Of a DNA stretch of 64,000 bases, positions 10,101 through 28,209 are shown in pieces (the stretch's first letter is position 1; each line of letters begins with the position of its first letter). Made by a program: the position numbers and the translations under genes. The notes beneath the pieces were generated by a model. It saw only the letters and a program-made list of their open reading frames with translations. It was not told the DNA's origin and ran no database searches. The stretch comes from Ranitomeya imitator. Taxonomy: Eukaryota. The stretch lies in assembly GCF_032444005.1 (NCBI RefSeq), contig NC_091290.1, forward strand, positions 21,204,001 to 21,268,000, in the 5' to 3' direction.

Positions 10101-13100
10101 ACTGGTGGCTCCTCTCCAAATACGACAATCAGGATCTGAATTAACCCCAGCAGGTCTGACGGAGGCTGCGGAGAGAGAAGAAAGCGGTGACTACTCCTCC
10201 TCTGTGGCCCGGCTGCAAGCATCACATTCTCATCGAGTCACGTTCTGTTTCCGTCACACCGAGCTGCTCTTCAGTCAGAACAAAGAGGCCGGCGATACCA
10301 GGTACCCGGCCAGTACCGAGCATAAAGGAAAAAAACGGAATAGTAAAGCCTCTGCACATACTGTAGTATATATCTATATACATCACTTGTGACCTTGGTG
10401 GGTTTTAATTGGTGCTGTGACCACTTCCGATAACTGGGTCCGGCCACGGCTGCCGGGTACGGAGAGGCGCTATGCATGAAGGTCTCTTTATTAAAGGGGG
10501 TGTCCATCAATTCGGGGCCTCAAAAAATAAAAACTATTTATACTCACCTCCCACAGCAAAGTTGGATCTCCTGTTCCTGGTGGGTGACAATTCGTTGTTG
10601 TGTTACAAGACCGCTGCAGTCGATCAGCTGTTGGCCATCAATATTCTGGCAGAGCGGATGTCCTGACAAAATAGCAGAGGCTGCAGCCAGTCAGCGGACA
10701 CAGACTGGCTGCAGTGCTCGGGTAACAATGCGAGTGGCAGGAGACCCGGTGCCAGTTTATGAGGAGAGTAACACCTTTTCTTGCTTTACTCGGGAATTTA
10801 AGAAGAGGTTGTTCAAGTAATGACGTCCATTCAGGCTTTCCACAGATCAGAATAAACCCCTTGATCAATTTCCTATATAAAGAATAACTGCTCTCACAGT
10901 AAACAATCCTGCCTGCAGACGGACATCATCTCTGTTCTGTCCATGAATAAATCTATACACAGGTGACCCCGACGCTGAGCAGAGACCTGGGACCGGACGT
11001 ACGGCAGCCCCGAGGACGCTTCTAGCAGGCGACTGTACTCACGTGTTTCCATTCGTGCAGATACGGGAGGTAGATCTTGCCGTTAGCGTCTACATGTTTT
11101 CCGGTTTTTATGGTCATCGTACTGGTGGGTTTCACAAAGCAGATTGGGGGGTTGTAGGGGTAGGTGTCCAGCAGCCAGAGACATATGGGGATATTGTATG
11201 TGTTACCTAAAGCAAACGGAAACGAAAGAGAACACGTTCGATATCTAACAACTACAGATACACAGCTGCCACCATAATCTCTATAGCAGTGCGGCCTGCA
11301 GCTCTTCAGGTACCACAACTCCCAGCATAACTGCGTAGAACAATTATCGCCTTGCTCATGATTGCACGGGTGCAGCAACAGCGATGAAGAGTTCAACACG
11401 ACCGCGAACCTCATCAGTCCGGACAGTGTCCAATAGCGCAATATTTCTAAGTCTCCGTCATCCCAGGACTTACCTTTATACGCTACAGGGATGGTGCCCG
11501 AGAGGCTGAGCAGTTCTCTGGAGGTGCCATCATTGAAAACTACAAGGAGAAACATCAATTAGTCACTATTCCATGATGTCTCCTAAATTCTAGTGCTGGG
11601 TATTGGTCTATGTCTGCACAGGAGCAGCTGCCCCTCGCCTTCTCGTTGGGACAGGTGCTGCTTGACATCTCAGGGGGATGAGTAAATCTAAAGTTTGGGA
11701 CTCCCTTTTACTCAAACTCATTACTTTTTTTGCTTACGGCAGTCACTTTTTAAAGATCCCTCCTTGCTGTCAGTGAATGGAACATTTTACCTGCACCCAA
11801 ACACTGCAACAAAACTGCATAGAAGCGCTATTGCCATCACATAAGGTGGTAGTATGCGCCACCACACTACCATTAGTGGGGATCTGACGTCTACGACACT
11901 GAAAATATAAGGACGTGACTTGCGTCCCCTCTAACACCGCACAGCAGGACAAACGGCCCCCCAGCTGTGCAGGGATCTGCTGGAGACTCCATGTACCAGA
12001 ATGGAGCAGTGCCGCAGTTCCCTCCAGTGAGGGTATGAGGAGCGACACCAGCATAGATTCATCTCCATTGGTCCAAAGGCCGGACCCCCATCGACCACAA
12101 AGTGATAACATACCCCAAATATTTGCCATCACTTTTCAAGATGGGAATACCCTTGGATTTATAAGGCAGCAATGACCGTATTCCACCAAGAGACCTCTGC
12201 TCTAATCTTACGCCTTGTGTTAGTTTTGATAAATTCCCATTATTTCCTCGTAGTCACAGCTGAAGGTCGATTTCCTATGTGCAGAACAGGATTTTTAGGT
12301 CCTGGCAGGCGCTGGCGTCCATCATTGACATTCTCCTTTGTAGTGACCATGAGACAGAGACCACTTTGTCCCAAGCATGAAACCACAGAGCGGCTGCTGC
12401 ACCTCCCCCCATAGGATCAGACCCCCTGTCATCGCCGTCAGGGTGGGATAGGGCCGCTCAAATAGATACGTGATAAAATCAGTTTTGATGCAAGGAGCAT
12501 AGGATGTGCCCAAGAGGGTGACTGTGTCGTGGTCCCCAGGACAGGACACAAACTCTCGCTACCGCCCCCTGCAGACATCAGTCACGTACCATAATGGTCA
12601 GGTAATGGCTTGAGGTCTCTGTAGAGCCCGGTGACATTCATGATCTCCCGCACCGACAGATCTCTGTATTTGTACTAAAACCAAGCAGACAAAAAAAAAA
12701 AATTACAAATCACAAGAAGAAGCCCCATCGGCCTCAGATGCATCCCTTCAATGTGAATGTGCAGCATCAAACACTATTTTATCTTTTTGTAATGTTAAAT
12801 CGGCCTCAACATTTTGATCCAATACATTTTCTATATATTTATAGGTCACTGGTACATTGCTCCAAATCTTATGCACAGAGATGGTTACATGATACAATTC
12901 TGTCTTCCTGCAGCCACCACTAGGGGGAGCTCATTGAGTACAGTTTTATTATTGGGTTCATTATATAGACAGCATGCAGGAAGCTGCCCCTAGTGGTGGC
13001 TGTATGGTGTTACAATGTCTCTGGCCCCCATGCGTGCACTCTATGTGTAGCTGACATCCATCTACTAGAACAGGGAGGATATAACGTGCGGACGCCGATA

Positions 13101-16100
13101 CGATGTCAGCCCCCCATCCCTGTAGATCCCAGTGCAGGGACGGGCTGATCTAGGACCCTGGGCGGCTTTATTCCTCAGGTACGACTTCCTTGTATAGAAA
13201 TCTGTGATCAGCCGGTCACATGAGCACTGGGGACTTATACTGGTAGTGCTGCCTTCCAGTGACATCACAGTGACTCATGGCTGTCAGCACATGACTAAGT
13301 GACGGTACACAAGGCTTAAAGGGACAGCGACATACAATAAAGAAATGCACCGACAACAGTAAATGTACAGTATACGGGGGTGTAGGATGAAATGGTACAG
13401 AGGCAGAGATACCGGGGGCAACGGACGGGTACAGAGGCCACGATACCTGGGGGAAGATTGGTACAGAGGCAGAGATACCGGGGGCAACGGACGGGTACAG
13501 AGGCCGCAATACCAGGGCAGGGGGGAAGGGGAGGGGGGGATTGGTACAGGGGATGAGATACCGGGGGAACGGACGGTGCAGAGGCCAAGATACCAGGAGG
13601 ACAGTACAGGGGACGAGATACCGGGGGGACGGACGGTGCAGAGGCCAAGATACCAGGAGGACAGTACAGGGGACAAGATATTGGGGGGGTGGGATTGGAG
13701 ACAGTACAGAGGCTGAGACACTGGGGGGGGGGGGGGGTAGCAGAACAGGGGAAGAGATACCGGGGAGGGGGGGGGGAGACAGAGCAGAGGCCTAGACACC
13801 GGGGGATATGGACGGTGCAGAGGCCAAGGTATCATGGGGAGGTACAGAGGCAGAGTTACGGGGGGGGCGGTGAAGACGGCACAGGGACAGAGATACAGGG
13901 GGAGAAGACGATACAGGGGCCGAGATACGGGAGATACCGGGGGGGGGGGGGGGGAAGGACAGTTGAGGGGCCGAGATGTGAGGGGAGAAGACGATACAGG
14001 GGCCGAGATAAGGGGGGGGGGGGGGGAGACGATATATGGCCTGAGTTACAGGGGTAGGGGGGAGAAGGAAGTGCAGGGGGTAGAAAAACAGGAGATACGG
14101 GGGGAGAAGACGATACAAGGGCTGAGATTTGGGAGATACTGGGGGGGGGGGGGGGTGTTGGGAGAAGACAATACAGGGGCCGGGATACAGAAGATACAGG
14201 GGGGGGGAGAAGATGATGCAGAGGCTGAGATACAGGAGATACAAGGAGGGAATATGACGGTACAGGGGCCGAGACGTTGGGAAAAGACGGTAATGGGGCC
14301 GAGACACGGGGGAGAGAAGGTGACACGGGGGCCGAGATACGGGAGGGGTCATATGACTGAGGGACAGAGATATGGGGGGGGGGGGGAAATAGACGGTGCA
14401 GGGGCAGGGGGGATATGACGGTTTAGGGGCCGAGATACGGGGGGGGGGGGGGAGGGGGAATATGACGGTGCAGGGGCGGAGGGGATATGACGGTGCATGG
14501 GCCGAGATACGGAGGGGGATATGACGGTGCAGGGACACAGATGCGGGGGGGAGATGATACAGTGGCCGAGACACGGGGGGATGTGACGATGCAGGGGCAG
14601 ATAGGGTGGGGGGATATGATGGTGCAGGGGCTGAGAAGGGGGTAAAAGATGATACAGGGGCCGAGATACAGGGGGGGGGGGGGGGATATGACGGTGCAGG
14701 GGCAGAGATACGGGGTGGGGGGTGGGGGGGAGATGATAGATACAGGGGCGGAGGTACGGGGGGAGATGATAGATACAGGGGCTGAGATACGGGGGGAGAT
14801 GATAGATACAGAGGCTGAGATACGGGGGGAGATGATAGATACAGGGGCCGAGATATGGGGGGGGGGGGGGGGGGAATGATAGATACAGGGGCTGAGGTAC
14901 GGGGGGGGGGGGGAGATGATAGATACAGGGGCTGAGATACGGGAGGAGATGATAGATACAGAAGCTGAGATACGGGGGGAGATGATAGATACATGGGCCG
15001 AGATACAGGGGGGGATGATAGATACAGGGGCTGAGGTACGGGGGGGGAGATGATAGATACAGGGGCTGAGGTACGGGGGGGGGGAGATGATAGATACAGG
15101 GGCTGAGATACGGGGGGAGATGATAGATACAGGGGCTGAGGTACGGGGGAGATGATAGATACAGAGGCTGAGATACGGGGGGAGATGATAGATACAGAGG
15201 CTGAGATACGGGGGAGATGATAGATACAGGGGCCGAGATACAGGGGGGGATGATAGATACACGGGCTGAGATACGGGGGGAGATGATAGATACAGAGGCT
15301 GAGATACGGGGGGAGATGATAGATACAGGGGCCGAGATACGGGGGGAGATGATAGATGCAGGGGCTGAGGTACGGGGGGGGGGGGGGAGATGATAGATAC
15401 AGGGGCTGAGGTATGGGGGGGAGATGATAGATACAGGGGCTGAGATACGGGGGGAGATGATAGATATAGAGGCTGATATACGGGGGGAGATGATAGATAC
15501 AGGGGCCGAGATACAGGGGGGGGGGGGATGATAGATACAGGGGCTGAGGTACGGGGGAGATGATAGATACAGGGGCTGAGATACGGGGGGAGATGATAGA
15601 TACAGAGGCTGAGATGCGGGGGGAGATGATAGATCCAGGGGCCGAGATACGGGGGGAGGGGGAGAATGATAGATACAGCAGGGGATGAGGTACGGGGGGG
15701 GGAAATAATAGATACAGGGGCTGAGGTACGGGGGAGATGATAGATACAGGGGCTGAGATACGGGGGGAGATGATAGATACAGGGGCTGAGATACGGGGGG
15801 AGATGATAGATACAGGGGCTGAGGTACGGGGGAGATGATAGATACAGGGGCTGAGATACGGGGGGAGATGATAGATACAGGGGCTGAGATACGGGGGAGA
15901 TGATAGATACAGAGGCTGAGATACAGGGGGAGATGATAGATACAGGGGCTGAGATACGGGGGGAGATGATAGTTACAGGGGCTGAGATACAGGGGGAGAT
16001 GATAGATACAGAGGCTGAGATACGGGGGGAGATGATAGATACAGGGGCTGAGATACAGGGGGAGATGATAGATACAGGGGCTGAGGTACGGGGGGAGATG

Positions 16101-18191
16101 ATAGATACAGGGGCTGAGATACAGGGGGAGATGATAGATACAGGTGCTGAGATACGGGGGGAGATGATAGATACAGGGGCTGAGATACGGGGGGAGATGA
16201 TAGATACAGGGGCTGAGATACAGAGGGGGGAGATGATAGATACAGGGGCTGAGATACGGGGGGGGGAGATGATAGATACAGGGGCTGAGATACGGGGGGA
16301 GATAGATACAGGGGCCGAGATACAGGGGGGGGATGATAGATACAGGGGCTGAGATACGGGGGGAGATGATAGATACAGGGGCCGAGATACGGGGGGAGAT
16401 GATAGATACAGAGGCTGAGATACGGGGGGAGATGATAGATACAGGGTCCGAGATACGGGGGGGGGGGAGAAGATGATAGATACAGGGGCTGAGGTACGGG
16501 GGGGGGGGGGGGAGATGATAGATACAGGGGCTGAGATACGGGGGGAGATGATACAGGGGCTGAGATACGGGGGGAGATGATACAGGGGCTGAGATACGGG
16601 GGGAGATGATAGATACAGAGGCTGAGATACGGGGGGAGATGATAGATACAGGGGCCGAGATATGGGGGGGGGGGGGGGAATGATAGATACAGGGGCCGAG
16701 ATACAGGGGGGGATGATAGATACAGAGGCTGAGATACGGGGGGAGATGATAGATACAGGGGCTGAGGTACGGGGGGAGATGATAGATACAGGGGCCGAGA
16801 TACGGGGGGGAGATGATAGATACAGGGGCTGAGGTACGGGGGGGGGGGGGAGATGATAGATACAGGGGCTGAGATACGGGGGGAGATGATACAGGGGCCG
16901 AGATACGGGGGGAGATGATAAATACAGAGGCTGAGATACGGGGGGAGATGATAGATACAGGGGCTGAGATACAGGGGGAGATGATAGATACAGAGGCTGA
17001 GATACGGGGGGAGATGATAGATACAGGGGCTGAGATACAGGGGGAGATGATAGATACAGAGGCTGAGATACGGGGGGAGATGATAGATACAGGGGCTGAG
17101 ATACAGGGGGAGATGATAGATACAGAGGCTGAGATACAGGGGGAGATGATAGATACAGAGGCTGAGATACGGGGGGAGATGATAGATACAGGGGCTGAGG
17201 TACGGGGGGAGATGATAGATACAGGGGCTGAGATACAGGGGGAGATGATAGATACAGGGGCTGAGATACGGGGGGATGATAGATACAGGGGATGAGATAC
17301 GGGGGGAGATGATAGATACAGGGGCTGAGATACGGGGGGGAGATGATAGATACAGAGGCTGAGATACAGGGGGAGATGATAGATACAGGGGCTGAGATAC
17401 GGGGGGAGATGATAGATACAGGGGCTGAGATACGGGGGGAGATGATAGATACAGGGGCTGAGATACGGGGGGAGATGATAGATGCAGGGGCTGAGATACG
17501 GGGGGGATGATAGATACAGGGGCTGAGATACGGGGGGGATGATAGATACAGGGGCTGAGATACGGGGGGGAGATGATAGATACAGGGGCTGAGATACGGG
17601 GGGGAGATGATAGATACAGGGGCTGAGATACGGGGGGAGATGATAGATACAGGGGCTGAGATACGGGGGGGAGATGATAGATACAGGGGCTGAGATACGG
17701 GGGGAGATGATAGATACAGGGGCTGAGATACGGGGGGGAGATGATAGATACAGGGGCTGAGATACGGGGGGAGATGATAGATACAGGGGCTGAGATACGG
17801 GGGGATGATAGATACAGGGGCTGAGATACGGGGGGAGATGATAGATACAGGGGCTGAGATACGGGGGGGAGATGATAGATACAGGGGCTGAGATACGGGG
17901 GGAGATGATAGATACAGGGGCTGAGATACGGGGGGATGATAGATACAGGGGCTGAGATACGGGGGGAGATGATAGATACGGGCTGAGATGATGGTGCAGG
18001 GGCCGATATTCCGGGTGAAGGGAGATGGATGAGGAGAGGGATATGACGGTGCAGAGATACGGGGGACTGTCACACAGTGGTGGCGGGTCCACAGTGACAG
18101 GACTCCCGCGGGTCAGACATGGTGACCCGCTTGTGGGCGTTCCCCTCACCTTGCTCAGCATCTTCTTCAGCTGGGCCTCTGACACCGCCAT
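4039..18191 (-). CDS. TSG101: Tumor susceptibility gene 101 (ESCRT-I/Vps23), complete 10-exon gene, 392 aa
   Basis: complement(join(18150-18191,12590-12674,11474-11539,11043-11206,10045-10165,9687-9747,9323-9429,4993-5195,4481-4720,4039-4128)) = 1179 nt. All introns GT-AG with compatible phases. UEV, Pro-rich region with GPPNTSY, coiled coil, PTAP and steadiness box all present. Confidence 0.97.
4481..4720 (-). CDS. TSG101: TSG101 exon 9
   Basis: [17 protein letters not shown]...[11 protein letters not shown]...DLDVFLK; 240 nt, AG/GT. Confidence 0.96.
4993..5195 (-). CDS. TSG101: TSG101 exon 8
   Basis: [32 protein letters not shown]...RLDQEV; 203 nt. Confidence 0.96.
5760..5892. mobile_element. 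Partial copy of the TAGTGATGAG-ended MITE family
   Basis: Shares GGATTGCCTAACAAA, CATGTGTTGCGGCTGTC and GAGCATGCTCAGATAACACCTT with the copies at 29944 and 30910. Confidence 0.6.
9323..9429 (-). CDS. TSG101: TSG101 exon 7
   Basis: [35 protein letters not shown]; 107 nt, phase 2 to 1. Confidence 0.9.
9687..9747 (-). CDS. TSG101: TSG101 exon 6
   Basis: [21 protein letters not shown]; 61 nt, phase 1 to 2. Confidence 0.92.
10045..10165 (-). CDS. TSG101: TSG101 exon 5
   Basis: [40 protein letters not shown]; 121 nt. Confidence 0.95.
11043..11206 (-). CDS. TSG101: TSG101 exon 4
   Basis: [55 protein letters not shown]; 164 nt. Confidence 0.97.
11474..11539 (-). CDS. TSG101: TSG101 exon 3
   Basis: [22 protein letters not shown]; 66 nt. 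Confidence 0.96.
12590..12674 (-). CDS. TSG101: TSG101 exon 2
   Basis: [28 protein letters not shown]; 85 nt. Confidence 0.95.
13330..18060. repeat. G-rich minisatellite in TSG101 intron 1 (~31-33 bp unit GGGGGAGATGATAGATACAGGGGCTGAGATAC); homogeneous core ~14730-17990, degenerate flank 13330-14730
   Basis: Unit read directly, roughly 100 core copies; G-run lengths vary. Confidence 0.95.
18150..18191 (-). CDS. TSG101: TSG101 exon 1 (coding part)
   Basis: [14 protein letters not shown]; ACCATGG Kozak context, AAG|GTGAGG donor. Confidence 0.96.
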
Positions 18192-18299
18192 GGTGAGGAG
18201 TGTCCCCGCCGCCGATCACTGACCGTCCCCGAGCTCCCTCCGTTTCCCTTTTCGGGCTCCTAGAACCAAACCCAGTGAAGCCGGAAATCCAGCTGTCCG

Positions 18300-18405
18300 C
18301 ACTGCGACTTCCGCTCCTGGCTCATACGTCACTTCCCTGGATACAGCCGTGTGTTACCATGGTGACCACAGACTTCGCTGCCGCCGCCATGTTGGATGAG
18401 GGCAG
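18300..18405 (-). promoter_or_regulatory. TSG101 proximal CpG-rich promoter with ETS/CRE, X-box-like and YY1-like motifs
   Basis: TACGTCACTTCC (18325-18336), GTTACCATGGTGAC (18353-18366), CCGCCATGTT (18384-18393); the same motifs recur upstream of the duplicate. Confidence 0.65.
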
Positions 18406-21226
18406 TTCTCCCTGACTCCTCCATGTTACATCTAGATCCCATTTTTAGCCAATATCTCCTGTCTACAGCTCTGCTGTCCGCTCAGCTTACACTGTAATAT
18501 CGAATATTAACTTATGAGGCATATTGTGGATACAGTCAGATTGCATCATGTGATGGAGCAATACAACCACATACAACCAACTGCAGAAACGGAAAGGAGA
18601 ACGCCCAGGATGTCTGGTGACTACTGGGAACTGTCCAGCCTGAGGCTGCGGCGCTGCTGTTTCTTGTAGTTCTGGTCACAGTTGCGCTGCGGTGCAAGAA
18701 TAAATAGCGAAGAGGCCGCGGCGCAGACATCACTCACTGGAGCGTGCGCAGGGCCGATAGTCCTGGGGGCAACATCTCAGAAGAAAAAAGAAAGAAATTA
18801 GTAGTGGTGTTAGTGGCCAAGATCTGAGACTGCACACAGACCATCCTTGTAGCTTGTGACAAATACAATTTCCTCATTTTAGTCCATTGAGCCATTACAT
18901 TCATTGCGAAAAATCAGTGAGAAATGTAAAGCCATACGGATGCATAGGTGCGAGAAAGTCGCATCATGGCATTACACACGGATGACCAGAGAACACTCCT
19001 GCGACTCTCGGCAGGGAGACTCGGACCCATTTTCTATACGTTTAGTGTGACGCCGGCTTTAGAATAATATATATAGCTGCACCAGTAAGGGAATGTAAGA
19101 ACGCAGGAGCCGCTCCACACCAAGGACGGAGAAAAAAGGAAAAAGGCGGATTGGACAGGTAGCATGGAAGCATAGTGCTAAGATGGCAAAGAAGTGGGCT
19201 CAGAGGCTAAAAAAGAAGTGTGCACCAACAGCAGAGGAGACCACAGGGTGGGCTGGCCAATGTGAGTAAGACTGGCGGAAATAGTCAGTGCCATTAGTCA
19301 GAGACCAGAGGAGAGTTATCGGTAGACAGGTGGCTGGAAGCAAACTTAGAGGGTTTTACTTACCTCCGTTTGATCCCTTTCCTTCAGATTCCAACAGGGT
19401 CACTCTGGTGAATGGGAGAACGGGTGAGGAGCAGACTCAAATGTGGGCAACCCTAAAAGACCCCACAAACATTATATAGCCAAGAGTCCCTGTGTTCTCT
19501 ATAAGAGAGCCTCTGCCAACCTCCTCTGTTGGAGGCCGACTTCTTGGAGAACAAAAGGACGGGCTGTTGAAATTCAACAGGACGGATAATCACTGCTCAA
19601 CTTCATCTGTGGGGAAAAGAAAAGAGGTCCTGTACAGACTGTACGCCAATTCCGCCAAGGTCGGTGTTTGCCCTACTTTAGTCTGATGTGTATGGAGCCT
19701 CAAGGTTGATAAGATACAGAGGAGCATTAGTGTCCCCACTTGGCTTCTTTGAGGGTCTCTGCATCGTGATGGGGTTGATATTATTACCTATGCCCAACCA
19801 TGGGAATAATGGGGAGACGGTGACATTCCTGGAACATATCATAACCCTTCTGTGACAGCAGTGAGGTCATAAGGTAAAACTGGAGGAAGGACACCGCCTT
19901 GGCAGGAGACAACATTCTTAGCCGTTTGTCACCCACCTATTGGTAGCAGCCTATATCCTAAATCTTCTGTACCCCCCATCCCAATAACACAAGCAACAAA
20001 TTATTTTAAACTGGTTTTATTGTATATACTGTATATATTATATACTGGTACATTCCTCATTATATTCACAGCATTATGGCCTTTAAATAACATCTTATAC
20101 TACACTAACAAGCTCAGTTTCTAAAGTAGTTGAGCAAAAACCATTTACAAGACCCTGTCTCAATGGCCGCATCTGGGGTCCATGGCTGCCAGTCTAGTAC
20201 CCTGCGAGACCCCCACTACTTACTGGAATCTCCGGAGCCTCTTCTGATTACTACAATGAAAATGATAAAAACGAGGACGGATGAGAATCCAATGGGCAAG
20301 TATAAAACCTTTTTATTCAGACTTCACGTTTCAGAGCCGATCTGGACCCTTCCTCAAGGCACATAATGACGGAATATTGGTCATGACTTTTTATAGGGGT
20401 CATTGATGACAAAATAAATAGATTTCACAAATCAGCATTAGATACATCTAAAAAAAAAAGACAGTATATCAGAAAAGCATTTTTTATATCCACATTATTA
20501 GGCAAGTAGGCTAAAAATTCCTATCCTATATTAATTACATAACAAAATGTAATGAATATATAAAATAAACATATTAAATTATACCGTAATTCATTATATT
20601 TTCTTATTATACCAGACACGAAAAACTGACGTGACCATTGAACCAGGATCCCGGAAGTCTTTTTGCTCAACTCTTGTTTTCAAATAAAAAGTATCAGAGC
20701 AAACTTTTAGAATAGAATAATCTCAGATAAATAGGGCAATCCTTACATTATATGCATAGCATAGCTAGAGGACGGTGAAGTCAGGGCGTAATTGGAAAGG
20801 AGGAGAGCCATGACAAAGAATCATGTCCCTCATAACTATGTGAAATGGAACAAAGTATATAGAGTAAAGGATGATATAATATTAGATTAATTTTTACATT
20901 CTCTAAATTGTCAAAATGCTGTAAACGTTTATATCATAATTATAGAATGTTATATTTTCAGCATGTATAAGGCTGCGCTCTCATTGTGTTTAGGCACCGT
21001 TCATTGGCGCCGTAAAGGCTTGTGATTGATCCTCCCCACAAAATGGGATTTGGACGTATGCACTGACGATGCCCATAGACTAGAATGGTACTGAATAGCG
21101 TACGTGTGCTCTGCACCATTATTGTCTACGGCCCGCCGGCACATATATCCGAACATGTGCCCCAACGTGAGCCACTGAACGCAGCGTGAAACCACCCTAA
21201 GAACAGAACAAACAAATTGACCAAAT

Positions 21227-21396
21227 TCACAACTCTTTGGCTTTCAAAGCCAAAATTTTGGCCTCGGTGTCATTCACGATCTGTTTTATCTTCTGTAGGC
21301 AGTCGAGGTATATGTCGATCGCCTGCTGGTTTTTAGGGTCGACATCTTCTGGCCGAGGCAGAAACGATAGTTTATCTGTAGGGACTACAGCAGAAT
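21227..21396 (-). CDS. Candidate terminal exon of the TSG101-like duplicate (predicted amphipathic/coiled-coil helix)
   Basis: Strong acceptor (T-tract + ttcttag). Phase-1 frame gives xSAVVPTDKLSFLPRPEDVDPKNQQAIDIYLDCLQKIKQIVNDTEAKILALKAKEL*; the other two frames stop early. Confidence 0.5.
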
Positions 21397-21700
21397 CTAA
21401 GAAAGTGAAAAAAAAAAGTAAAAAAAAAAAAAAAAAAGGGATTAGTATACCTATAGTTGCAAAAACAATGTCTCCAAGACCATCAAATATACAGATTTAC
21501 CTAGTCTTGAAGGGGATGTCCAATGACTGGAGCACCCCTTTATAAATTAAGCAGTCCCCCTTGTAAAATAAAGATGACAGATGCTCACCTTCTGCACTGG
21601 CGCCTTTCTAGCTAGATAAGCGCCGAGTCACACTTGACTTTGTTACACCATGTGGGTCCTGCAGAAAAGCAGTGGCCACTTTGGGCTGACGCGGTCTTAC

Positions 21701-21785
21701 TTCTTCCACTCGTCCGACATTCACCCGACAGAATAACAAGCTCTGTAGCCCAATTGCAGCCGCTGATCGTTATGCCATGTGAGCC
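21701..21785 (-). CDS. Candidate internal exon of the TSG101-like duplicate (acceptor uncertain: 21785 phase 0 or 21742 phase 1)
   Basis: Good phase-1 donor A|GTAAGA at 21700, compatible with the terminal exon; peptide ends ELVILSGECRTSGR. Confidence 0.3.
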
Positions 21786-22184
21786 CTGCAGCCAATGTAA
21801 CAAGCCCCGGCATCATTGGCACAGTGCTCCTGCGGGAGGTGAGTGTCTGTTATTTTTATTTTACAAGGGGAAATACTTAATACAAACATGGTTTATCCAA
21901 GTAGTGGACAAACCCTTTAAGGTAAGGTTCATATTATATTTGATGCAGATTTTACTATGAAGCGTGCAGTGTTTCTGCATCTACAATCTGCGCATATTTT
22001 CCACACTTATTAATCAAATTTTACTTGAATATAATCTGCGCTAAAAAGGTGCACGTAAACAGAAAAATTATTGAAAAAAAATGTATATGATGATTCTGCA
22101 CCAAATGTATATGCAGCATGTGGATGAGAAAGAACAATTTGGAACCCATCCTCCTTGCTGGTATATAAAAGCGAGAGGACACGG

Positions 22185-22578
22185 CAGAGAAAGAAAGAGC
22201 GCGATGCGGGAGAAAGAGAGAGAGAAAGAGAGAAAGTGAGCGCCGCGGCAGAGAGAGAACGTGCACTGCGGCAGAGAGAGAAAGAGCGGGCCACGGCAAA
22301 AGGGGAGAAAGAGCACGCTGTGGTAGAGAGAGCGTGCCGCAGCAGAGGGAGAGAGCAGCATGGTAGACAGAGGAAGAGAGCGCCACAACACAGAGATATA
22401 GCGTGCCACGGCACAGAGAGAAATAGCGCGCCGCGGCACAGAGAGAGAGCGTGCCGCAGCAGAGAGAGAGCGCGCGCACCACGGCAGAGAGAAAGAGCAC
22501 CGCGGTAGAGAGAGGAAGAGCGTGCCACGGCACAGAGAGAAATAGCACGCTGCGGCACAGAGAGAAAGAGCGCACCGT

Positions 22579-22634
<56 letters not shown>

Positions 22635-22715
22635 GAGCGCCACGGCAGAGGGAGAGAGAGCGCGCGCCGCAGCACAGAGAGAAAGAGCGCGCCGCAGCAC
22701 AGAGAGAGAAAAAGC
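22185..22715. repeat. AG-rich low-complexity repeat with a pure (GA)25 microsatellite at 22581-22630
   Basis: Degenerate GCGCCGCGGCAGAGAGAG units and a GA run read directly. Confidence 0.9.
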
Positions 22716-22754
22716 ACACATGAACTTTGCAAAGTTCTGTTGAACCAGACGTAC

Positions 22755-22823
22755 CCGAACTTCCACAGGTCTGCTCATCCCCAATCTCCACAAAATACAT
22801 GAACAGAGAGTAATTGCTCTTTC
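22755..22823 (-). CDS. Candidate internal exon of the TSG101-like duplicate
   Basis: gctacag acceptor, G|GTACGT donor, 69 nt, phase 1-1, open: KSNYSLFMYFVEIGDEQTCGSS. Confidence 0.3.
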
Positions 22824-23247
22824 CTGTAGCATGTTTTTGCTAATATAAAATAGGAATAATTTTCACAGTTTCACCTCTTACAGAGACAGCTCCTGTGTTA
22901 TTGACTCCTGCACATTCTTCATCAAGGTGGACAGAGGAGGCACAATCGCAAATACTCTCCATATGGGCACAGGGCAACATCAGTGGCTGGCCATAAACAA
23001 TATTAACTCAATGTGAACACAAAACATAACAGAAAATTCAAGAAAAATTACAAATTTCTATGATTTGTTAGTGGTTCTGTCCCTCAATCAGACAATGCAT
23101 AAGCCATTTACAGGGGGCCAGAATCAGTATGGACGTATGCCCGACTCTTCAAATGTTATTTTCTGCGTGTTTCTCATAGCTGCCACATAAAGGTTACAGT
23201 GAATAAAAAGAAAATAAAAAAAATCAGATGATAATTTCTCTGCTAAC

Positions 23248-23319
23248 CATTAATACTTGTATATAAATCTTCCACGTCGTCACTTGCACAGGTGTCATCT
23301 TGAGCCACGGTCGGGGAAG
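23248..23319 (-). CDS. Candidate exon 6 of the TSG101-like duplicate
   Basis: ccttctgcag acceptor, G|GTTAGC donor, 72 nt, phase 1-1, open: TSPTVAQDDTCASDDVEDLYTSIN. Confidence 0.35.
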
Positions 23320-23398
23320 CTGCAGAAGGTAAATTATTTATTATCAGCCATGTGATTATTATACAGAAAAGCTTATATCTTGTAAGTTTTTTTGGTGT

Positions 23399-23452
23399 CT
23401 GCAGCTGTCACTCCCAACTGGAAATTAGAAAGTGCCGTCTCGGCTTGGGTCA
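23399..23452 (-). pseudogene. Decayed remnant of TSG101 exon 8 inside the duplicate
   Basis: 12-nt exact match GTGCCGTCTCGG (23432-23443 vs 5177-5188; PSRDGT), plus a colinear ~21/31 match to the [10 protein letters not shown] codons after an internal deletion. Confidence 0.55.
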
Positions 23453-23580
23453 TGGCAAGAGCTAAAACTTAGTCCTGAAGTCTTAGCTTTAAAAACAAGA
23501 CCGAAATTGCAGTAGTAGCCGTGATCCAGGCTGAGATGTTGCCAGTTACTGACATCCCCCCTCCTGGTACCAAAGGTACA

Positions 23581-23780
23581 ACAAGAGGGGCGGCCGAACA
23601 GCAAGAGGGGCAGCCGAACAGCAAGAGGGGCGGCCGAACAGCAAGAGGGGCGGCCGAACAGCAAGAGGGGCGGCCGAACAGCAAAAGGGGCGACAGAACA
23701 ACAAAAGGGGCGACAGAACAACAAAAGGGGCGACAGAACAACAAAAGGGGCGACAGAACAACAAAAGGGGCGACAGAACA
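23581..23780. repeat. 20-bp minisatellite, 10 copies, switching midway from GCAAGAGGGGCGGCCGAACA to ACAAAAGGGGCGACAGAACA
   Basis: Read directly. Confidence 0.93.
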
Positions 23781-23860
23781 GACAAGCAGCAGCTGCAGGA
23801 GGTGGAAAATCTATAACTTAGGCTTTTACTTATTATTTAGCAGTGGCCGATAAAACTTAC

Positions 23861-23984
23861 TTTTGGGAAGTCCGGCTACCAGGCTCAAGAATGAAGCAGG
23901 TTCAGGAGATCGAGAGAAAACTGGCGGCTCCTCTCCAAATACGTCAATCAGTATCTCAATTAACCTCAGCAAGTCTAGTGGAGG
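23861..23984 (-). CDS. TSG101-like duplicate exon 5
   Basis: [41 protein letters not shown]; ctccgcag acceptor, A|GTAAGT donor. Confidence 0.85.
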
Positions 23985-26882
23985 CTGCGGAGAGGGGACA
24001 CAGCGGTGACTACGCTGCGCCGGACGCTGTACTCAACTGTGGCCCGCGGTCCGGCACATTCTCACTTATCAGGGGGTTTGGGTCCTAAATGACAGTGCTG
24101 ATTGATTTTACATATGTGGGGGGTTAAAAAGGTCTTAAACTTTTATCCGGTGAGCTAGCAAAATAACGTGCACCTTCTAACGCTTTATTTTGTCTCTTTA
24201 ATTGCATGAAGATTTAAGTACAGAAAAAGTAAAACATTATATTTACCGTCATGGGCGAAAGTGTTGGCACCCCTGAAATTGTTCCAAAAAATGAAGTATT
24301 TCCCCCAGAAAATGATTGCGATTACACGTTTATTTCCTTTGTGTGTATTGGAACACAAAAAAAACAGAGACAAAAAGAAAATTGGACATAAATTCACACA
24401 AAACCCCAAAAATGGGCAGGACAAAATTGTTGACATCCACTTATTTGGATGAAATATTTGGACACTGACAAGTTTTGGTATTTTAGCCGTTTACCAAAAC
24501 ATATTCACAATCCAGTTATCCAATCAATTTGGGCTTAAAGTGCCGACTCTCAGCTTTAATTTGAGGACATTCACATCCTAATTGAAGCAAAGGTTTAAGA
24601 GTTACATCTCTAATATGTCGCTGCCTCTTTTTCAAGGGACCAAAAGTAATTTGACAAATATCTCAAAAGCTCTTTGATGGGCTTTTCCCTCGTTATTCCA
24701 TCATTAATTAAGCAGAGAAAAGGTCTGGAGCTGATTCCAAGTGTGGCGTTTGAATTTGGAAGCTGTTGCTGTGAACCCACAATATGCGGCCATAGGAGCT
24801 CTCAATGGAGGATAAACAGTCCATCATTATAGACCGATGAAAAGAAGAAATCCATCAGAGAGATAGCAGAAATGTTAGGAGTGTCCAGTTACTTTTGAGC
24901 CCCTGAATGAGGAGGCTTTGTAGGAAAGTGGTTGCAATTCCAAAGACTTTAATTAAACCTGAAAGTGTCCATTTCAATTGCATCTCAGTTGTTTAATTTT
25001 AAATCCAAAATACTGACCTGCGGAGCTGAAATCATGAAGTTCGGCCACTGTCTAAATATTTCTGGACCTAACTGTATTTATACACAGGTGACCCCGGCAC
25101 ACAGCAGCCCTGAGGACCGGACACACAGCAGCCCTGAAGACGCGACTTGCAGGCCATTGTACTCACCTGCTTCCATTCCTCCAGATACGGGAGGTAGATC
25201 TTGCCGTTAGCGTCTACATGTCTTCCGGTTTTTATGGTCATCGTACTGGTGGGTTTCACAAAGCAGATTGGGGGCTTGTGGGGGTAGGTGTCCAGCAGCC
25301 AGAGACATATGGGGATATTGTATGTGTTACCTAAAGCAAATTAAAATAGATGAGCGAGAACGTCTGATACTTATCAATTACAGGCACAGCTGCCATCACA
25401 ACCATCTCTACAGCCTGTGGTTCTCCAGCTACTACAACTCCCAGCATGCCCCGTCAGTCACAAACTGAGACTTGGAAAGTTGGGATGTAAATCATGGCCA
25501 ATACCGTAAAATCGTGGACAATTTCTCCTTAGATTCCCCCTGATGTAATCGTAAATGCACAAATGATCCCTCGCTCCTCCGCAGATCTGGTTAGGATGGA
25601 GCTTCCCAGATCTCCGCTTACCTTTATAGGGCACAGGAATGGTGCCCGAGAGGCTGAGGAGCTGTCTGGTGGAGCCATCGCTGAAAACTAGAGGTGGGAA
25701 TGCGAAAAGAAGTCTAAAAACACAAAAATCCTGACGGAGAAGATCGACAAATATCTATTTAATGATTGAATAGACTGATATCAATGATTTCTCTAAAGAT
25801 AGATCTTCAATATTAGATTTCGGGAGGAGACACCCGGACCCCCCCTATGATCAGCGGCGGCTCCGAATCTGCAGGCTGTAGTGTCCGCTGCCGGGTCCCG
25901 CGCCTTGTACAGCTGCTCCCCCACACATTCTCCTATCCAACGCCCCAAAAACACTCACCGTAACGGGCAGGTAATGGCTTGAGGTCTCTGTAGAGCTCAA
26001 TCACACCCATGATCTCCTCCAATGATGAATCTCTGTATTTGTACTAAAACGAAGCAGGAAAAAAAAAAAAACATTACATGACCATTGCCACAGCCTTAAT
26101 GAAATTCACCCTCAGCCTTTGATACATCCCTTTAAATAGAATCTGTCAGCAGGTTTCTGCTTTGTAATCTGAGGGCAGCAAAATATCGGGGCTGAAACAC
26201 GGATTTCAGCAATATGTTACTTATTAGGTTGTGTGCCGTTTCAATACAATAAGTGTTTTATCAGCAAGAGATCATCACTGCCGGTGACACACGAGCACTG
26301 CCCGCGGCCGGTGACACACGAGCACTGCCCGCGGACGGCGACACACGAGCACTGCCCGCGGACGGCGACACACGAGCACTGCCCGCGGCCGGCGACACAC
26401 GAGCACTGCCCGCGGCCTTAAAACAATATTTTGCGTTTTTAATTATAGCTAAGTAAAGCTTATTAATTTGTTATCAATCGTCAATAATAGTTTTTTTTTC
26501 TGATACAGAGAGCGGCCAATGCCACAAGATAAAAATCCTGGCTGCCTGCAGTCGCCACCAGGGGGAGCTGCTGAATACAATTTATACATTGGGAACAGAA
26601 TGAAGTGCGCTCCCCCTGGTGGCGGCTGCAGGTAACTATATAGCACTTAGTGGCGCTTCCCAGGAATACACGATACTTCTCGTTACACCGCACTCCCATA
26701 TTATCCCACTGCTCCGCCCACAACCAAACCTCCCCACCTCACACACACCGCAGCCAGCTATGGACGCCGACAAGCCGACGATGGCGTCCGCTCCTCGGTA
26801 CCTGGCGGCCGCTCCTCGGTACCTGGCGGCCGCTCCTCACCTTGCTCAGCATTTTCCTCAGCTCCTCCTCAGTCACCGCCAT
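23861..26882 (-). CDS. TSG101-like partial tandem duplicate (UEV-domain gene), exons 1-5; C-terminus uncertain
   Basis: complement(join(26841-26882,25959-26043,25622-25687,25167-25330,23861-23984)). Exon sizes 42/85/66/164/124 and phases match TSG101; all GT-AG; no stop or frameshift; 119/145 aa identical over the UEV domain; flanking introns still align with TSG101 introns. Confidence 0.88.
24246..25074 (+). mobile_element. Composite Tc1/mariner remnants
   Basis: 5' end matches the 28210 element. An internally deleted second element follows, with a transposase N-terminal fragment ([13 protein letters not shown]) and a TIR ending ...GGACCTAACTG|TA. Confidence 0.65.
25167..25330 (-). CDS. TSG101-like duplicate exon 4
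   Basis: [55 protein letters not shown]; 157/164 nt identical to TSG101 exon 4. Confidence 0.9.
25622..25687 (-). CDS. TSG101-like duplicate exon 3
   Basis: [22 protein letters not shown]; ctctag / G|GTAAGC. Confidence 0.88.
25959..26043 (-). CDS. TSG101-like duplicate exon 2
   Basis: [28 protein letters not shown]; ttttag / G|GTGAGT. Confidence 0.88.
26281..26415. repeat. 27-bp tandem repeat, 5 copies (CCGGTGACACACGAGCACTGCCCGCGG)
   Basis: Read directly. Confidence 0.92.
26841..26882 (-). CDS. TSG101-like duplicate exon 1
   Basis: [14 protein letters not shown]; ACCATGG context, AAG|GTGAGG donor. Confidence 0.88.
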
Positions 26883-26929
26883 GGTAAATGGAAAGTCCCG
26901 TCAGAATGAGCAAACAGAAAACACAGCAG

Positions 26930-27030
26930 TCACAACTTCCGCTAGACGGCTACGTCACTTCCGTGTATACGACCAGTCGTTCCTATGGTTACCGCGGTCT
27001 ACGCTGCAACCGCCATTTTGGATAAGGGCA
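26930..27030 (-). promoter_or_regulatory. Duplicated TSG101-type promoter
   Basis: TACGTCACTTCC (26951-26962), GTTCCTATGGTTAC (26979-26992), CCGCCATTTT (27010-27019), in the same order and near-identical spacing as at 18325-18393. Confidence 0.65.
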
Positions 27031-28209
27031 GGTCTCTCTCACTCAAACATTTTCTATTGAGATTTTTTCTGAGGGGCTTCCTAAAAATAATACATAACCA
27101 GCAAACTCGATCCAGGATTTGTCGCTGTAATTTTTCAGTCGCTTGGGGTTTTTTTTTTTCCAGGATTTGTCGCTGTATTTATCATACAGTCCTGGTGTAC
27201 ATTTTTTCATGTGTTTTTATTAAATTTTTGGGAGGAGGCAAAGAGCAGTTCTGCCAATTTTTTTTTTATTTGGCTGTGTTCAACAAACAGGTTAAATGTT
27301 TTTTTTTTTGTTTTACACTGGGTCCTTCCAGATATATTTATACTAATTATGTGGGTTTATTTTTTTTTTTAATTACATAGTAAAGGAGGAAAATTGGATT
27401 TTTTTTTTCAGTATATATTTGATATTAGACCCAGACTCTGGGTGCCATGGCAACGCATCGGCGACCACCGCGGTCACGTCATGTGGCGATAAGCCCACCT
27501 TCATCCGTGTAACCCCCAAGATGCTGCAGTCGCTGTTGACCGCGGCATCTAAAGTCTTAAGCGGAGGGGACCTTCAGCGCTATTCACCTTTACACCCACG
27601 GATGGCGGCCTGGATGACAATCCATGGCGATCATGCACCATCAACAGGATAGGCTATATATGTAGGATTGCTGGGGGGTTAGACAGCAAAGATCCCCTCA
27701 AAACCTGACAACGGGGGTCCCAAAGTACTGATGTATGTGAACGTTCAGTGCTCCGTGGACCTGGCAGAGAGCTGTACTGGCAGTCCCATAGAAGTGAATG
27801 GAGTGCGGCCTGAGCGCACACACTACGCCTCCATTCTCTCAGCTCATTTGGAGAACCCCAGTTCTCTTTTTTTTTTGGGGGGGGGGGGGGGGGACCAGCA
27901 TTCTGAACCCCTGGAATCAGTTCTCCCCTAGTTTGTGGCTTAAGCCATTGTCAAGAATGTCTAAAAATTCCTAATATTTCATCCGTCTGATGCAAAAATT
28001 GCTTTTGGTCATTGGCTGAAGATCATTGCGTAATTGATGGATTTTATGGGTTTTATCCGTCAGCTTACGTCCCATTGGGATCTCTCCGCTGTGGATCTCC
28101 GGGTAATCTTGCATCGCAAACGTCAAGATTCGTGGAGATCCACAAAAATAAAATGGCAGGCTGCAACTTTTTTTTGTGAAATCTCATTATCAACATTGCT
28201 GTTGTCATA

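What the first reader, a model, noticed from the sequence alone, without database searches (positions are those of the whole stretch)
21227..27030. A third UEV-domain gene: intact partial tandem duplicate of TSG101 between TSG101 and UEVLD
Seen: five exons (26841-26882, 25959-26043, 25622-25687, 25167-25330, 23861-23984) reproduce TSG101 exons 1-5 in size and phase. All GT-AG sites, the Kozak ATG and the open frame are intact despite 26 amino-acid replacements in 145 codons (hand count). Flanking introns still align, for example GTGAGTACA...GGGGTCACCTGTGTATA after exon 4, so this is a genomic duplication and not a retrocopy. No intact copies of exons 6-10 follow. Established: the vertebrate locus as I know it runs LDH-TSG101-UEVLD with a single TSG101. 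Inference: a lineage-specific UEV gene that I do not recognise as described. Losing no splice site and gaining no stop at this divergence argues against a dead pseudogene.
Basis: partly seen in the sequence, partly recalled or inferred. Interest (0 to 1): 0.88.

Follow-up and report, generated by a model that had tools for sequence, protein, structure and literature searches.

The report
Frog UEV-only TSG101 paralog gene
Between UEVLD and TSG101, this poison-frog genome carries an intact seven-exon gene made from a tandem copy of TSG101's first five exons plus two new exons; its protein keeps the peptide-binding head of TSG101 but lacks the part that joins the ESCRT-I membrane-sorting complex.

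Summary
All five exons sit at the stated coordinates with GT-AG borders, an open frame and exactly 26 replacements in 145 codons.

The gene does not stop at exon 5. A 72-nt cassette exon (23319-23248) and a terminal exon (21396-21227) complete a 240-aa or 216-aa protein. A RefSeq protein of Ranitomeya imitator, "TSG101 protein-like" isoform X2, maps onto the window without a mismatch.

The same gene sits in the same place (UEVLD, copy, TSG101, one strand) in R. variabilis, Phyllobates, Anomaloglossus and Engystomops. It is not called in Bufo, and no trace of it is in the DNA of Dendropsophus or Eleutherodactylus.

The protein is a folded UEV domain with every P(S/T)AP-pocket residue kept, then an acidic disordered linker, then a conserved C-terminal helix with no detectable relative. 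It has no Vps23 core.

The new tail is under purifying selection (dN/dS 0.16). The UEV part evolves about 25 times less constrained than TSG101 and shows patchy gene conversion from TSG101.

Most likely it is a P(S/T)AP-binding module uncoupled from ESCRT-I, acting as a competitor or adaptor. That function is inferred, not shown. The gene is auto-annotated, and I found no paper describing it.

The parts
26883..27060 (-). Duplicated core promoter and short 5'UTR of the copy
   Evidence: It aligns with the TSG101 promoters of four frogs. The ATGGCGG, GGAAGTGACGT and GGAAGT motifs are invariant. The copy shares two deletions with the Engystomops copy that no TSG101 promoter has. CpG observed/expected is 0.96 over 26700-27100.
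26841..26882 (-). Coding exon 1' (42 nt, ACCATGG start)
   Evidence: The RefSeq isoform X2 protein P0380 maps here exactly.
26802..26840 (-). Optional 39-nt extension of exon 1', an alternative donor inside a 21-bp tandem repeat
   Evidence: Isoforms X1 and X3 carry 13 extra residues. A GTACCG donor follows 26802. The repeat spans 26782-26838.
25959..26043 (-). Coding exon 2' (85 nt)
25622..25687 (-). Coding exon 3' (66 nt), which encodes the ubiquitin-binding hairpin and Tyr63 and is skipped in isoforms X3 and X4
25167..25330 (-). Coding exon 4' (164 nt), the core of the UEV domain
   Evidence: Pfam UEV E=4.7e-25 for this exon alone. It is 96% identical to TSG101 exon 4, with dS 0.03, which is the signature of gene conversion.
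23861..23984 (-). Coding exon 5' (124 nt), the end of the UEV domain and the start of the linker
   Evidence: Homology to TSG101 stops about 10 nt past its donor.
23248..23319 (-). Coding exon 6' (72-nt in-frame cassette, acidic linker, weak GTTAGC donor)
   Evidence: It is present in P0380 and P0158 and absent from the 216-aa R. variabilis isoform X2.
21227..21396 (-). Terminal coding exon 7' with the stop codon at 21229-21227, encoding the rest of the linker and the conserved C-terminal helix
   Evidence: It is 78% identical in DNA to L001 23601-23726 of Engystomops. It has dN/dS 0.16 and 29 columns invariant in five species.
20016..20317 (-). Candidate polyadenylation signals (AATAAA at 20317-20312 and 20021-20016)
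   Evidence: Pattern scan 909 and 1205 nt after the stop. The transcript end is not verified.
10035..18419 (-). Parental segment of TSG101 (promoter to just past exon 5) that was duplicated

Best explanation
This is a functional, lineage-restricted protein-coding gene of Ranitomeya imitator.

How it arose: a tandem duplication copied the TSG101 promoter and exons 1-5 into the UEVLD-TSG101 gap. This happened in an ancestor of Dendrobatoidea and Leptodactylidae, during the hyloid radiation of roughly 60 million years ago. The truncated copy then took up two downstream exons of no detectable ancestry. Since then the UEV-coding exons have exchanged sequence with TSG101 by patchy gene conversion.

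What it encodes: (i) a complete UEV domain with the P(S/T)AP pocket intact; (ii) a disordered linker of about 55 residues with net charge -9, part of it an alternative cassette; (iii) a conserved amphipathic helix of about 35 residues. It lacks the proline-rich region, the stalk and the Vps23 core of TSG101, so it should not enter ESCRT-I.

Inferred mechanism: it binds P(S/T)AP ligands without coupling them to ESCRT-I. It would therefore act as a competitor or modulator of TSG101 recruitment, or route such ligands to whatever the new helix binds. In Ranitomeya, Asn45 and neighbouring residues of the ubiquitin-binding hairpin are replaced, so ubiquitin binding may be weakened there.

Shown: the gene structure, its origin, its conservation, selection on the tail, and the fold. 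Inferred: ligand binding, exclusion from ESCRT-I, and the cellular role.
For: Structure and annotation:
- RefSeq isoform X2 (P0380, 240 aa) maps exactly as seven GT-AG exons.
- Five isoforms and a GenBank model exist for this gene.

Orthologs and synteny:
- The order UEVLD, copy, TSG101 is found in Engystomops, Phyllobates (24), Anomaloglossus (26) and R. variabilis (35).
- No gene is called in the gap in Bufo (30). No relic is in the Dendropsophus or Eleutherodactylus DNA (31-33, 38).

Single origin:
- The tail exon is shared.
- Promoter and 5'UTR deletions are shared by both copies against all TSG101 promoters.

Selection:
- Tail dN/dS is 0.16, bootstrap 0.05-0.48.
- Between the two copies the UEV part has dN/dS 0.28.
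- On the Engystomops branch omega is 0.30, below 1 at p=7e-4.
- Exons are 88% identical to the parent against 70-75% for flanking intron. The UEV coding has no indel, against 5 gap openings in about 245 intron nucleotides.
- With 52 random substitutions, 26 or fewer replacements occur with P=0.002.

Promoter: CpG observed/expected is 0.96 and the core motifs are conserved.

Protein:
- Pfam finds UEV only (2.8e-45), while TSG101 also has Vps23_core.
- The human TSG101 UEV structure matches by sequence at E=4e-72.
- In the AlphaFold model the UEV domain has pLDDT 84-97, the linker is below 50 and the helix at 205-239 is 81-90.
- Foldseek gives TM 0.94-0.98 and rmsd 0.6-1.0 A to solved TSG101 UEV structures.
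- Pocket residues Y63, Y68, N69, I70, M95, P139, V141, F142, S143 and R144 are invariant in all five copies. Their roles are taken from PMC11670305 and PMC2172688.

Precedent: overexpressed N-terminal TSG101 (TSG-5') blocks PTAP-dependent budding (Demirov 2002, as cited in PMC10807055).
Against: - No transcript or protein data could be inspected here. Expression rests on the existence of multi-isoform RefSeq models and on promoter features.
- On the R. imitator branch the UEV omega is 0.56 and not significantly below 1 (p=0.12 under the better topology).
- Nine of the 26 replacements hit positions invariant in TSG101 from shark to frog: L20, D40, N45, N83, K101, H115, S122, Q129 and V133. This could mean changed function or partial decay.
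- Gene conversion from TSG101 could by itself keep the UEV exons looking healthy.
- Two of the five isoforms skip exon 3 and would break the fold.
- The partner of the tail helix is unknown, and the tail has no homolog to suggest a function.
- The codon model was my own code, run on only six sequences.
Confidence: 0.62

Rival explanations
1. It is an antiviral decoy. On this reading the gene is a host-encoded natural version of the TSG-5' fragment. It soaks up viral P(S/T)AP late domains and blocks ESCRT-dependent budding, and it evolves fast under an arms race. That would make it the ESCRT-I counterpart of retroCHMP3.
For: - The architecture equals the experimental dominant-negative fragment: UEV without the ESCRT-I core (PMC10807055).
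- Omega is about 25 times higher than for TSG101 (0.56 and 0.30 against 0.023; LRT p=1.7e-12).
- Many replacements change charge on an otherwise invariant domain.
- Exon 4 shows 6 non-synonymous against 1 synonymous change since conversion.
- The PTAP pocket is strictly kept while the ubiquitin hairpin changes.
- There is a precedent of truncated ESCRT duplicates that block budding (bioRxiv 10.1101/2020.08.30.273656 and 10.1101/2021.04.27.441704).
Against: - No omega above 1 was demonstrated, and no site test was possible because only two copy coding sequences were available.
- No expression or interferon-response data could be examined.
- A decoy would also compete with cellular PSAP ligands such as HRS.
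- Relaxed constraint explains the raised omega equally well.
Confidence: 0.17
2. It is a slowly decaying or functionless duplicate. On this reading it is still transcribed from the duplicated CpG-island promoter, and it looks intact mainly because TSG101 keeps repairing its exons by gene conversion.
For: - The R. imitator UEV branch omega is not distinguishable from 1.
- Conversion tracts are evident: exon 4 dS is 0.03 in Ranitomeya and exon 5 dS is 0.10 in Engystomops.
- Replacements fall at nine TSG101-invariant sites.
- Exon-3-skipping isoforms exist.
- No gene is called in Bufo and no relic is found in Dendropsophus, which is compatible with dispensability.
Against: - The tail and cassette exons cannot be repaired by conversion, because TSG101 has no counterpart. 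Yet the tail has dN/dS 0.16 and 29 columns invariant over about 60 million years.
- All 12 splice sites and the frame are kept in five species from independent assemblies.
- Engystomops omega is significantly below 1.
Confidence: 0.1
3. It is an alternative 5' module of TSG101. On this reading, transcripts start at the copy's promoter and splice from exon 5' (phase 1) to TSG101 exon 6 (9747, phase 1). That would give a full-length ESCRT-I subunit with a variant UEV head.
For: - The phases are compatible.
- Both genes are on the same strand, 5.7 kb apart.
- Exon-block duplication with mutually exclusive use is a known pattern (general knowledge).
Against: - None of the five RefSeq isoforms or the orthologous models in four other species has this structure. 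All end in the tail exon.
- The tail exon would not be under selection if it were bypassed.
- TSG101's own promoter and exon 1 lie in between.
Confidence: 0.05
4. It is an assembly artefact: a collapsed or duplicated haplotype, or a mis-join.
For: The region is rich in tandem repeats, and there is an N gap elsewhere in the window at 35964-36117.
Against: - The copy differs from the parent by 12% in exons and 25-30% in introns, and it has unique 3' exons.
- The same arrangement is found in five other independently assembled genomes.
Confidence: 0.01

Closest known systems
TSG101 / Vps23 (ESCRT-I subunit), the parent gene
   Same: - The promoter core is homologous.
- The five-exon UEV block has identical intron positions and phases.
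- The UEV domain is 82% identical to the frog's own TSG101 and 72-73% identical to human TSG101.
- The fold superposes at 0.6-1.0 A rmsd, and the P(S/T)AP pocket is intact.
   Different: - It has no proline-rich region, no coiled-coil stalk and no Vps23 core or steadiness box.
- It has a new acidic linker and a new C-terminal helix.
- Its omega is 13-25 times higher.
- Asn45 is replaced by Ser in Ranitomeya.
UEVLD (UEV plus lactate/malate-dehydrogenase-like protein), the upstream neighbour
   Same: It also arose by partial tandem duplication of the 5' UEV exons of TSG101 at this very locus, followed by joining to foreign 3' exons (PMC2926785). The frog gene repeats that event one gene further along.
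   Different: - UEVLD is vertebrate-wide and carries Ldh_1_N and Ldh_1_C domains.
- Its UEV exon 4 is only 60% identical to that of this gene.
- The frog gene is confined to some hyloid frogs and ends in a short helix instead of an enzyme-like domain.
TSG-5', the experimental N-terminal fragment of TSG101
   Same: It is a UEV-containing protein lacking the ESCRT-I assembly region. Overexpressed, it blocks PTAP late-domain function (Demirov 2002, via PMC10807055).
   Different: TSG-5' is a laboratory construct (residues 10-240) that includes the proline-rich region. The frog protein is natural, has its own promoter and has a conserved new tail. Its activity is untested.
retroCHMP3 (truncated ESCRT-III duplicates in primates and rodents)
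   Same: It is a lineage-specific duplicate of an ESCRT gene that lost its C-terminal functional region. It shows that such truncations can be kept as budding inhibitors (bioRxiv 10.1101/2020.08.30.273656).
   Different: - retroCHMP3 is an intronless retrocopy of an ESCRT-III gene, truncated by a stop codon.
- The frog gene is an intron-bearing tandem duplicate of an ESCRT-I gene.
- It is truncated at the duplication breakpoint and then extended by new exons.

Membership tests
UEV-domain proteins of the TSG101/Vps23 type (Pfam PF05743) | Significant match to the UEV profile over the full domain | tested here: met
   PF05743 E=2.8e-45, profile positions 3-121 of 121. Exon 4 alone gives 4.7e-25.
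UEV-domain proteins of the TSG101/Vps23 type (Pfam PF05743) | E2-like alpha/beta fold superposable on solved TSG101 UEV structures | tested here: met
   AlphaFold model pLDDT is 84-97 over residues 1-145. Foldseek gives TM 0.94-0.98 and rmsd 0.6-1.0 A to 7zlx, 4yc1, 1s1q and 3obu.
UEV-domain proteins of the TSG101/Vps23 type (Pfam PF05743) | No catalytic cysteine at the E2 active-site position (Tyr110 in TSG101, from my own knowledge) | tested here: met
   Y110 is invariant in all 22 aligned sequences, including the five copies.
UEV-domain proteins of the TSG101/Vps23 type (Pfam PF05743) | P(S/T)AP-binding pocket residues (Y63, Y68, N69, I70, M95, P139, V141, F142, S143, R144) | tested here: met
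   All are invariant in the five copies and in 17 TSG101 sequences. The residue list is from PMC11670305 and PMC2172688. Actual binding was not tested.
UEV-domain proteins of the TSG101/Vps23 type (Pfam PF05743) | Ubiquitin-binding hairpin with Asn45 (the N45A mutation abolishes ubiquitin binding) | tested here: not met
   In both Ranitomeya species position 45 is Ser, and positions 48, 49 and 51 are also changed. Phyllobates, Anomaloglossus and Engystomops keep Asn45 (PMC2172688).
ESCRT-I core subunit (TSG101 orthologs) | C-terminal Vps23 core / steadiness box (PF09454) that assembles with VPS28, VPS37 and MVB12 | tested here: not met
   There is no PF09454 hit in P0380 or P0034, while TSG101 P0364 scores 6.6e-28. 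Tail against TSG101 gives BLASTP E=19 and hhalign probability 1%.
ESCRT-I core subunit (TSG101 orthologs) | Proline-rich region and coiled-coil stalk | tested here: not met
   No counterpart of TSG101 exons 6-10 lies in 18.2-23.8 kb. The linker is acidic, not proline-rich.
UEVLD | UEV domain fused to Ldh_1_N and Ldh_1_C domains | tested here: not met
   Pfam finds UEV only. The true UEVLD lies upstream, with exons near 55.2, 54.7 and 52.4 kb and its 3' end near 31.7 kb.
Processed or unprocessed pseudogene | Stops, frameshifts, lost splice sites or lost promoter | tested here: not met
   The frame is open over 240 codons, all 12 splice sites are canonical, and the CpG-island promoter is kept. 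The same holds in four other species.
Truncated dominant-negative ESCRT paralogs (retroCHMP3-like) | Duplicate of an ESCRT gene lacking the region that couples to downstream machinery | tested here: met
Truncated dominant-negative ESCRT paralogs (retroCHMP3-like) | Origin by retrotransposition | tested here: not met
   Introns are retained at parental positions, with alignable intron flanks.
Truncated dominant-negative ESCRT paralogs (retroCHMP3-like) | Inhibits ESCRT-dependent budding | not testable with these tools
   This needs cell-based assays.

The most novel reading that the evidence does not exclude
The gene is a naturally evolved ESCRT-I decoy. It would be a stand-alone PTAP-binding UEV protein kept in poison frogs and tungara frogs because it intercepts viral (or retroelement) late domains without disabling the essential TSG101. 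That would be an ESCRT-I analogue of retroCHMP3. The new helix would provide oligomerisation or targeting, and gene conversion from TSG101 would keep the bait faithful to the real target.
Probability: 0.17. Interest if true: 0.85.

Novelty: new variant of a known kind. Interest (0 to 1): 0.55.

Why it matters
TSG101 is a single-copy, extremely constrained gene. Omega is 0.02 here, and most UEV positions are invariant from shark to frog. Many enveloped viruses exploit it through its PTAP pocket.

A conserved natural protein that keeps that pocket but is cut loose from ESCRT-I offers three things.

- It is a ready-made experiment on what an uncoupled UEV domain does in a living vertebrate.
- It is a second, independent replay at the same locus of the event that created UEVLD. 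This is a clean case of how partial tandem duplication plus capture of new exons makes a new gene, with gene conversion acting on one half and not the other.
- It is a candidate for a host-encoded modulator of ESCRT recruitment.

If it proves to be only a modest regulator, it remains a tidy, datable example of new-gene birth. It also corrects the simple LDH-TSG101-UEVLD picture of this locus.

Tried and rejected
Origin of the tail, all without a result:
- BLASTP against TSG101 gave E=19.
- Profile-profile comparison gave probability 1%, with a weak 20-column match to the start of the TSG101 stalk.
- A PDB profile search found nothing.
- Pfam found nothing.
- A tail-only search of 5.8 billion proteins returned only the dendrobatid orthologs.
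- blastn and tblastn against the rest of the window and against the Dendropsophus and Eleutherodactylus loci found nothing.

The origin of the tail stays unknown. It is either newly exonised sequence or diverged beyond recognition.

Independent duplications in Engystomops and Dendrobatoidea:
- The UEV DNA favours each copy as sister to its own TSG101 (lnL -1285.1 against -1303.7).
- The AU test on proteins gives p=0.033 against a single clade of copies.
- I rejected this reading in favour of one duplication plus gene conversion. The copies share the tail exon, the position and the promoter deletions, and the per-exon dS is mosaic.

Technical dead ends:
- The first AlphaFold run, with a 22-sequence alignment, was too poor to use (pLDDT 51).
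- The first codon-model script timed out.
- The bacterial promoter and terminator scan is irrelevant to a eukaryote.
- Look-ups of shorter isoforms found nothing, because only the longest product of a gene is indexed.
- DNA of Phyllobates, Anomaloglossus, R. variabilis and Bufo could not be fetched.

As a result dN/dS rests on two copy sequences, and absence in Bufo rests on gene calls only.

A possible LC3-interacting motif (YTSI) in the cassette exon is not conserved in Phyllobates or Anomaloglossus, so I dropped it.

Full report
**Observation.** Each has an AG acceptor and a GT donor, the start is ACCATGG, and the frame is open.

A tblastn of the spliced product against the window shows three UEV gene copies on this strand:
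- UEVLD, with exons near 55.2, 54.7 and 52.4 kb;
- the copy described in the finding;
- TSG101, with exon 1 at 18191.

TSG101 exons 1-5 are 42, 85, 66, 164 and 121 nt, against 42, 85, 66, 164 and 124 nt in the copy, with the same phases. The count of 26 replacements in 145 codons is exact. Intron sequence next to the exons still aligns, so this is a genomic duplicate and not a retrocopy.

Downstream of exon 5' there is an acceptor at 21396. It opens a frame in the correct phase, which runs to a stop whose last base is 21227.

A profile-free search of 1.8 billion representative proteins with exon 4 returned a 218-aa protein of Engystomops pustulosus (P0034). It has a UEV domain followed by the same tail.

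Searching with P0034 found "tumor susceptibility gene 101 protein-like" proteins in five further frogs: Phyllobates terribilis, Anomaloglossus baeobatrachus, Ranitomeya variabilis and Ranitomeya imitator, plus Engystomops itself. The R. imitator sequences are identical to the window's exons.

RefSeq isoform X2 (P0380, 240 aa) maps without a mismatch as seven GT-AG exons. TSG101 of R. imitator (P0364, 392 aa) maps exactly as ten exons from 18191 to 4039. The window is therefore R. imitator.

The gene carries accessions XP_069596301 to XP_069596305 and CAJ0967493.1. The isoforms differ in three ways: an alternative exon 1 donor inside a 21-bp repeat, skipping of exon 3, and an internal start. 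The R. variabilis 216-aa form skips the cassette.

**Position and distribution.** The order UEVLD, copy, TSG101 on one strand is found in Engystomops (L001), Phyllobates, Anomaloglossus and R. variabilis.

In the window the UEVLD 3' end aligns at 31957-31679, and a conserved non-coding element lies at 30567-30442. The copy therefore lies wholly in the intergenic gap.

Evidence of absence elsewhere is as follows:
- In Bufo bufo and B. gargarizans no gene is called in the 8-10 kb gap.
- In Dendropsophus the gap is 3.2 kb, and the DNA holds no relic of the copy or of the tail.
- In Eleutherodactylus the 10 kb upstream of TSG101 likewise holds no relic.

A published table puts the splits among these hyloid families at about 62 million years ago (PMC13621697). 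The branching order of the families is unsettled. I therefore cannot say whether Bufo lost the gene or branched off before it arose.

**One duplication, then gene conversion.** At synonymous sites each copy is closer to its own species' TSG101 than to the other species' copy: 0.25 and 0.34, against 0.56. My codon-model fit prefers that topology by 18.6 log-likelihood units. A protein tree groups only the dendrobatoid copies (support 89/89), and the AU test gives p=0.033 against one clade of all five.

Taken alone this would suggest independent duplications. Three observations argue for a single origin:
- The copies share the tail exon, at 78% DNA identity, and it is absent from species without the gene.
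- They share the same breakpoint just after exon 5.
- They share two deletions in the promoter and 5'UTR that no TSG101 promoter has.

The per-exon pattern is mosaic. In R. imitator, dS between copy and parent is 0.37-0.53 for exons 1, 2, 3 and 5 but 0.03 for exon 4. In Engystomops it is 0.26-0.55 except for 0.10 in exon 5. I read this as one duplication followed by patchy conversion from TSG101.

**Is it under selection?** The tail cannot be repaired by conversion, so it is the cleanest test. Between Ranitomeya and Engystomops it has dN 0.18, dS about 1.1 and omega 0.16, with bootstrap limits of 0.05-0.48. It also has 29 columns invariant in five species.

For the UEV part, omega values are:

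| Branch | Omega | Test against omega = 1 |
|---|---|---|
| TSG101 (background) | 0.023 | - |
| Engystomops copy | 0.30 | p = 7e-4 |
| R. imitator copy | 0.56 | p = 0.12 (not significant) |

Both copy branches are far above the background (LRT 54, p = 1.7e-12).

Exons are much better kept than adjacent intron. Around exon 4 the figures are 96% against 70-75% identity, and no indel against five gap openings. Random placement of 52 substitutions gives 26 or fewer replacements with P=0.002.

The promoter keeps its CpG island and core motifs. Nine of the 26 replacements fall at positions invariant in 15 TSG101 sequences from shark to frog. The constraint has therefore changed, not merely weakened.

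**The protein.** Pfam finds only a UEV domain (2.8e-45). TSG101 also has Vps23_core.

The AlphaFold model built on a 53-sequence alignment has three parts:
- a confident UEV domain (pLDDT 84-97);
- a disordered segment at 148-203;
- a confident helix at 205-239.

The UEV part superposes on solved human TSG101 UEV structures with TM 0.94-0.98 and rmsd 0.6-1.0 A. A sequence search of the PDB gives E=4e-72. The linker has net charge -9 over 59 residues, and the helix is amphipathic.

All residues that form the P(S/T)AP pocket are invariant in the five copies (residue roles from PMC11670305 and PMC2172688). Asn45, whose mutation to Ala abolishes ubiquitin binding (PMC2172688), is Ser in the two Ranitomeya species only. 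Three neighbouring hairpin residues also differ there.

**Mechanism.** The protein keeps the ligand-binding head of TSG101 and lacks everything that assembles ESCRT-I. The most economical reading is a P(S/T)AP-binding module uncoupled from ESCRT-I. It would compete with or modulate TSG101 recruitment, or deliver ligands to an unknown partner of the new helix.

The experimental N-terminal fragment of TSG101 does exactly this to HIV-1 late-domain function when overexpressed (Demirov 2002, via PMC10807055). Truncated CHMP3 duplicates show that such ESCRT fragments can be retained by selection (bioRxiv 10.1101/2020.08.30.273656). None of this was tested for the frog protein.

**Comparison with known genes.** The event repeats, at the same locus, the origin proposed for UEVLD: duplication of the TSG101 5' exons joined to foreign 3' exons (PMC2926785).

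The gene is a member of the TSG101-type UEV family. It is not a TSG101 ortholog or an ESCRT-I core subunit, it is not a UEVLD, and it is not a retrocopy. Full-text searches found no paper on it. Its only public record is the automatic annotation.

**Limits.**
- No transcript data could be examined.
- Coding DNA was available for only two copies.
- The codon model was my own implementation and assumes one tree despite conversion.
- Absence in Bufo rests on gene calls alone.
- The origin of the tail is unresolved.

Noticed in passing
window 14725-17989 (array begins about 13393): TSG101 intron 1 holds a G-rich 33-bp minisatellite of about 97 copies, which causes the GC skew of +0.66 at 14-18 kb. 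Part of it aligns at 65% to Dendropsophus TSG101 intron 1 (L002 15332-16811). An array at this position therefore seems old. The copy's intron 1' lacks it.
   Followed up: partly
window 52455-54532, 55238-55623, 55720-56814, 57009-61747, 62123-62915: The UEVLD introns and upstream region are filled with very regular minisatellites: 28-mer x74, 31-mer x12, 35-mer x31, 34-mer x140 at 98% identity, and 58-mer x14. They explain the GC skew of -0.6 at 56-62 kb.
   Followed up: no
window 26782-26838: A 21-bp tandem repeat starts right at the exon 1' donor. Each unit recreates a CAG|GTACCG donor. RefSeq isoforms X1 and X3 use the donor after 26802 and gain 13 in-frame residues. So a repeat expansion is creating alternative in-frame splice donors.
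   Followed up: partly
window 23578-23786 and 22227-22718: A 20-bp repeat (x10) begins about 75 nt after the exon 5' donor, where homology to TSG101 ends. A GA-rich array of 23-48-bp units fills much of intron 6'. These repeats hide the duplication breakpoint.
   Followed up: no
window 30442-30567; L001 6381-6428; L002 7818-7942; L003 88-212: A non-coding element of about 125 bp downstream of UEVLD is conserved in four hyloid families (70-84% identity), whether or not the extra gene is present.
   Followed up: no
proteins P0001, P0002, P0007, P0011, P0179, P0235, P0236: Other vertebrates also have TSG101-derived oddities. Examples are fish models with two or four UEV exon-4 segments, 215-307-aa 'TSG101-like' proteins in Polypterus and in eels, and a Xenopus laevis tsg101.L product (326 aa) with exons 1-5 joined to an unrelated C-terminus. 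Partial reuse of the TSG101 5' block may be recurrent, although some of these may be annotation artefacts.
   Followed up: no
window 25330-25167 against 11206-11043: Exon 4' differs from TSG101 exon 4 by six non-synonymous and one synonymous nucleotide, while the flanking intron is 25-30% diverged. His82 is shared with the Phyllobates copy. So either the conversion is older than that split or the tract was patchy. The numbers are too small to test for positive selection.
   Followed up: partly
L001 22245-22302 and 23602-23721: In Engystomops the region equivalent to the single Ranitomeya terminal exon is split by a 1.3-kb intron, and the cassette exon has no clear counterpart. The 3' exon structure has therefore changed since the two lineages split.
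   Followed up: no
window 35964-36117: There is a run of 154 N inside the UEVLD gene region. I left it as it is.
   Followed up: no
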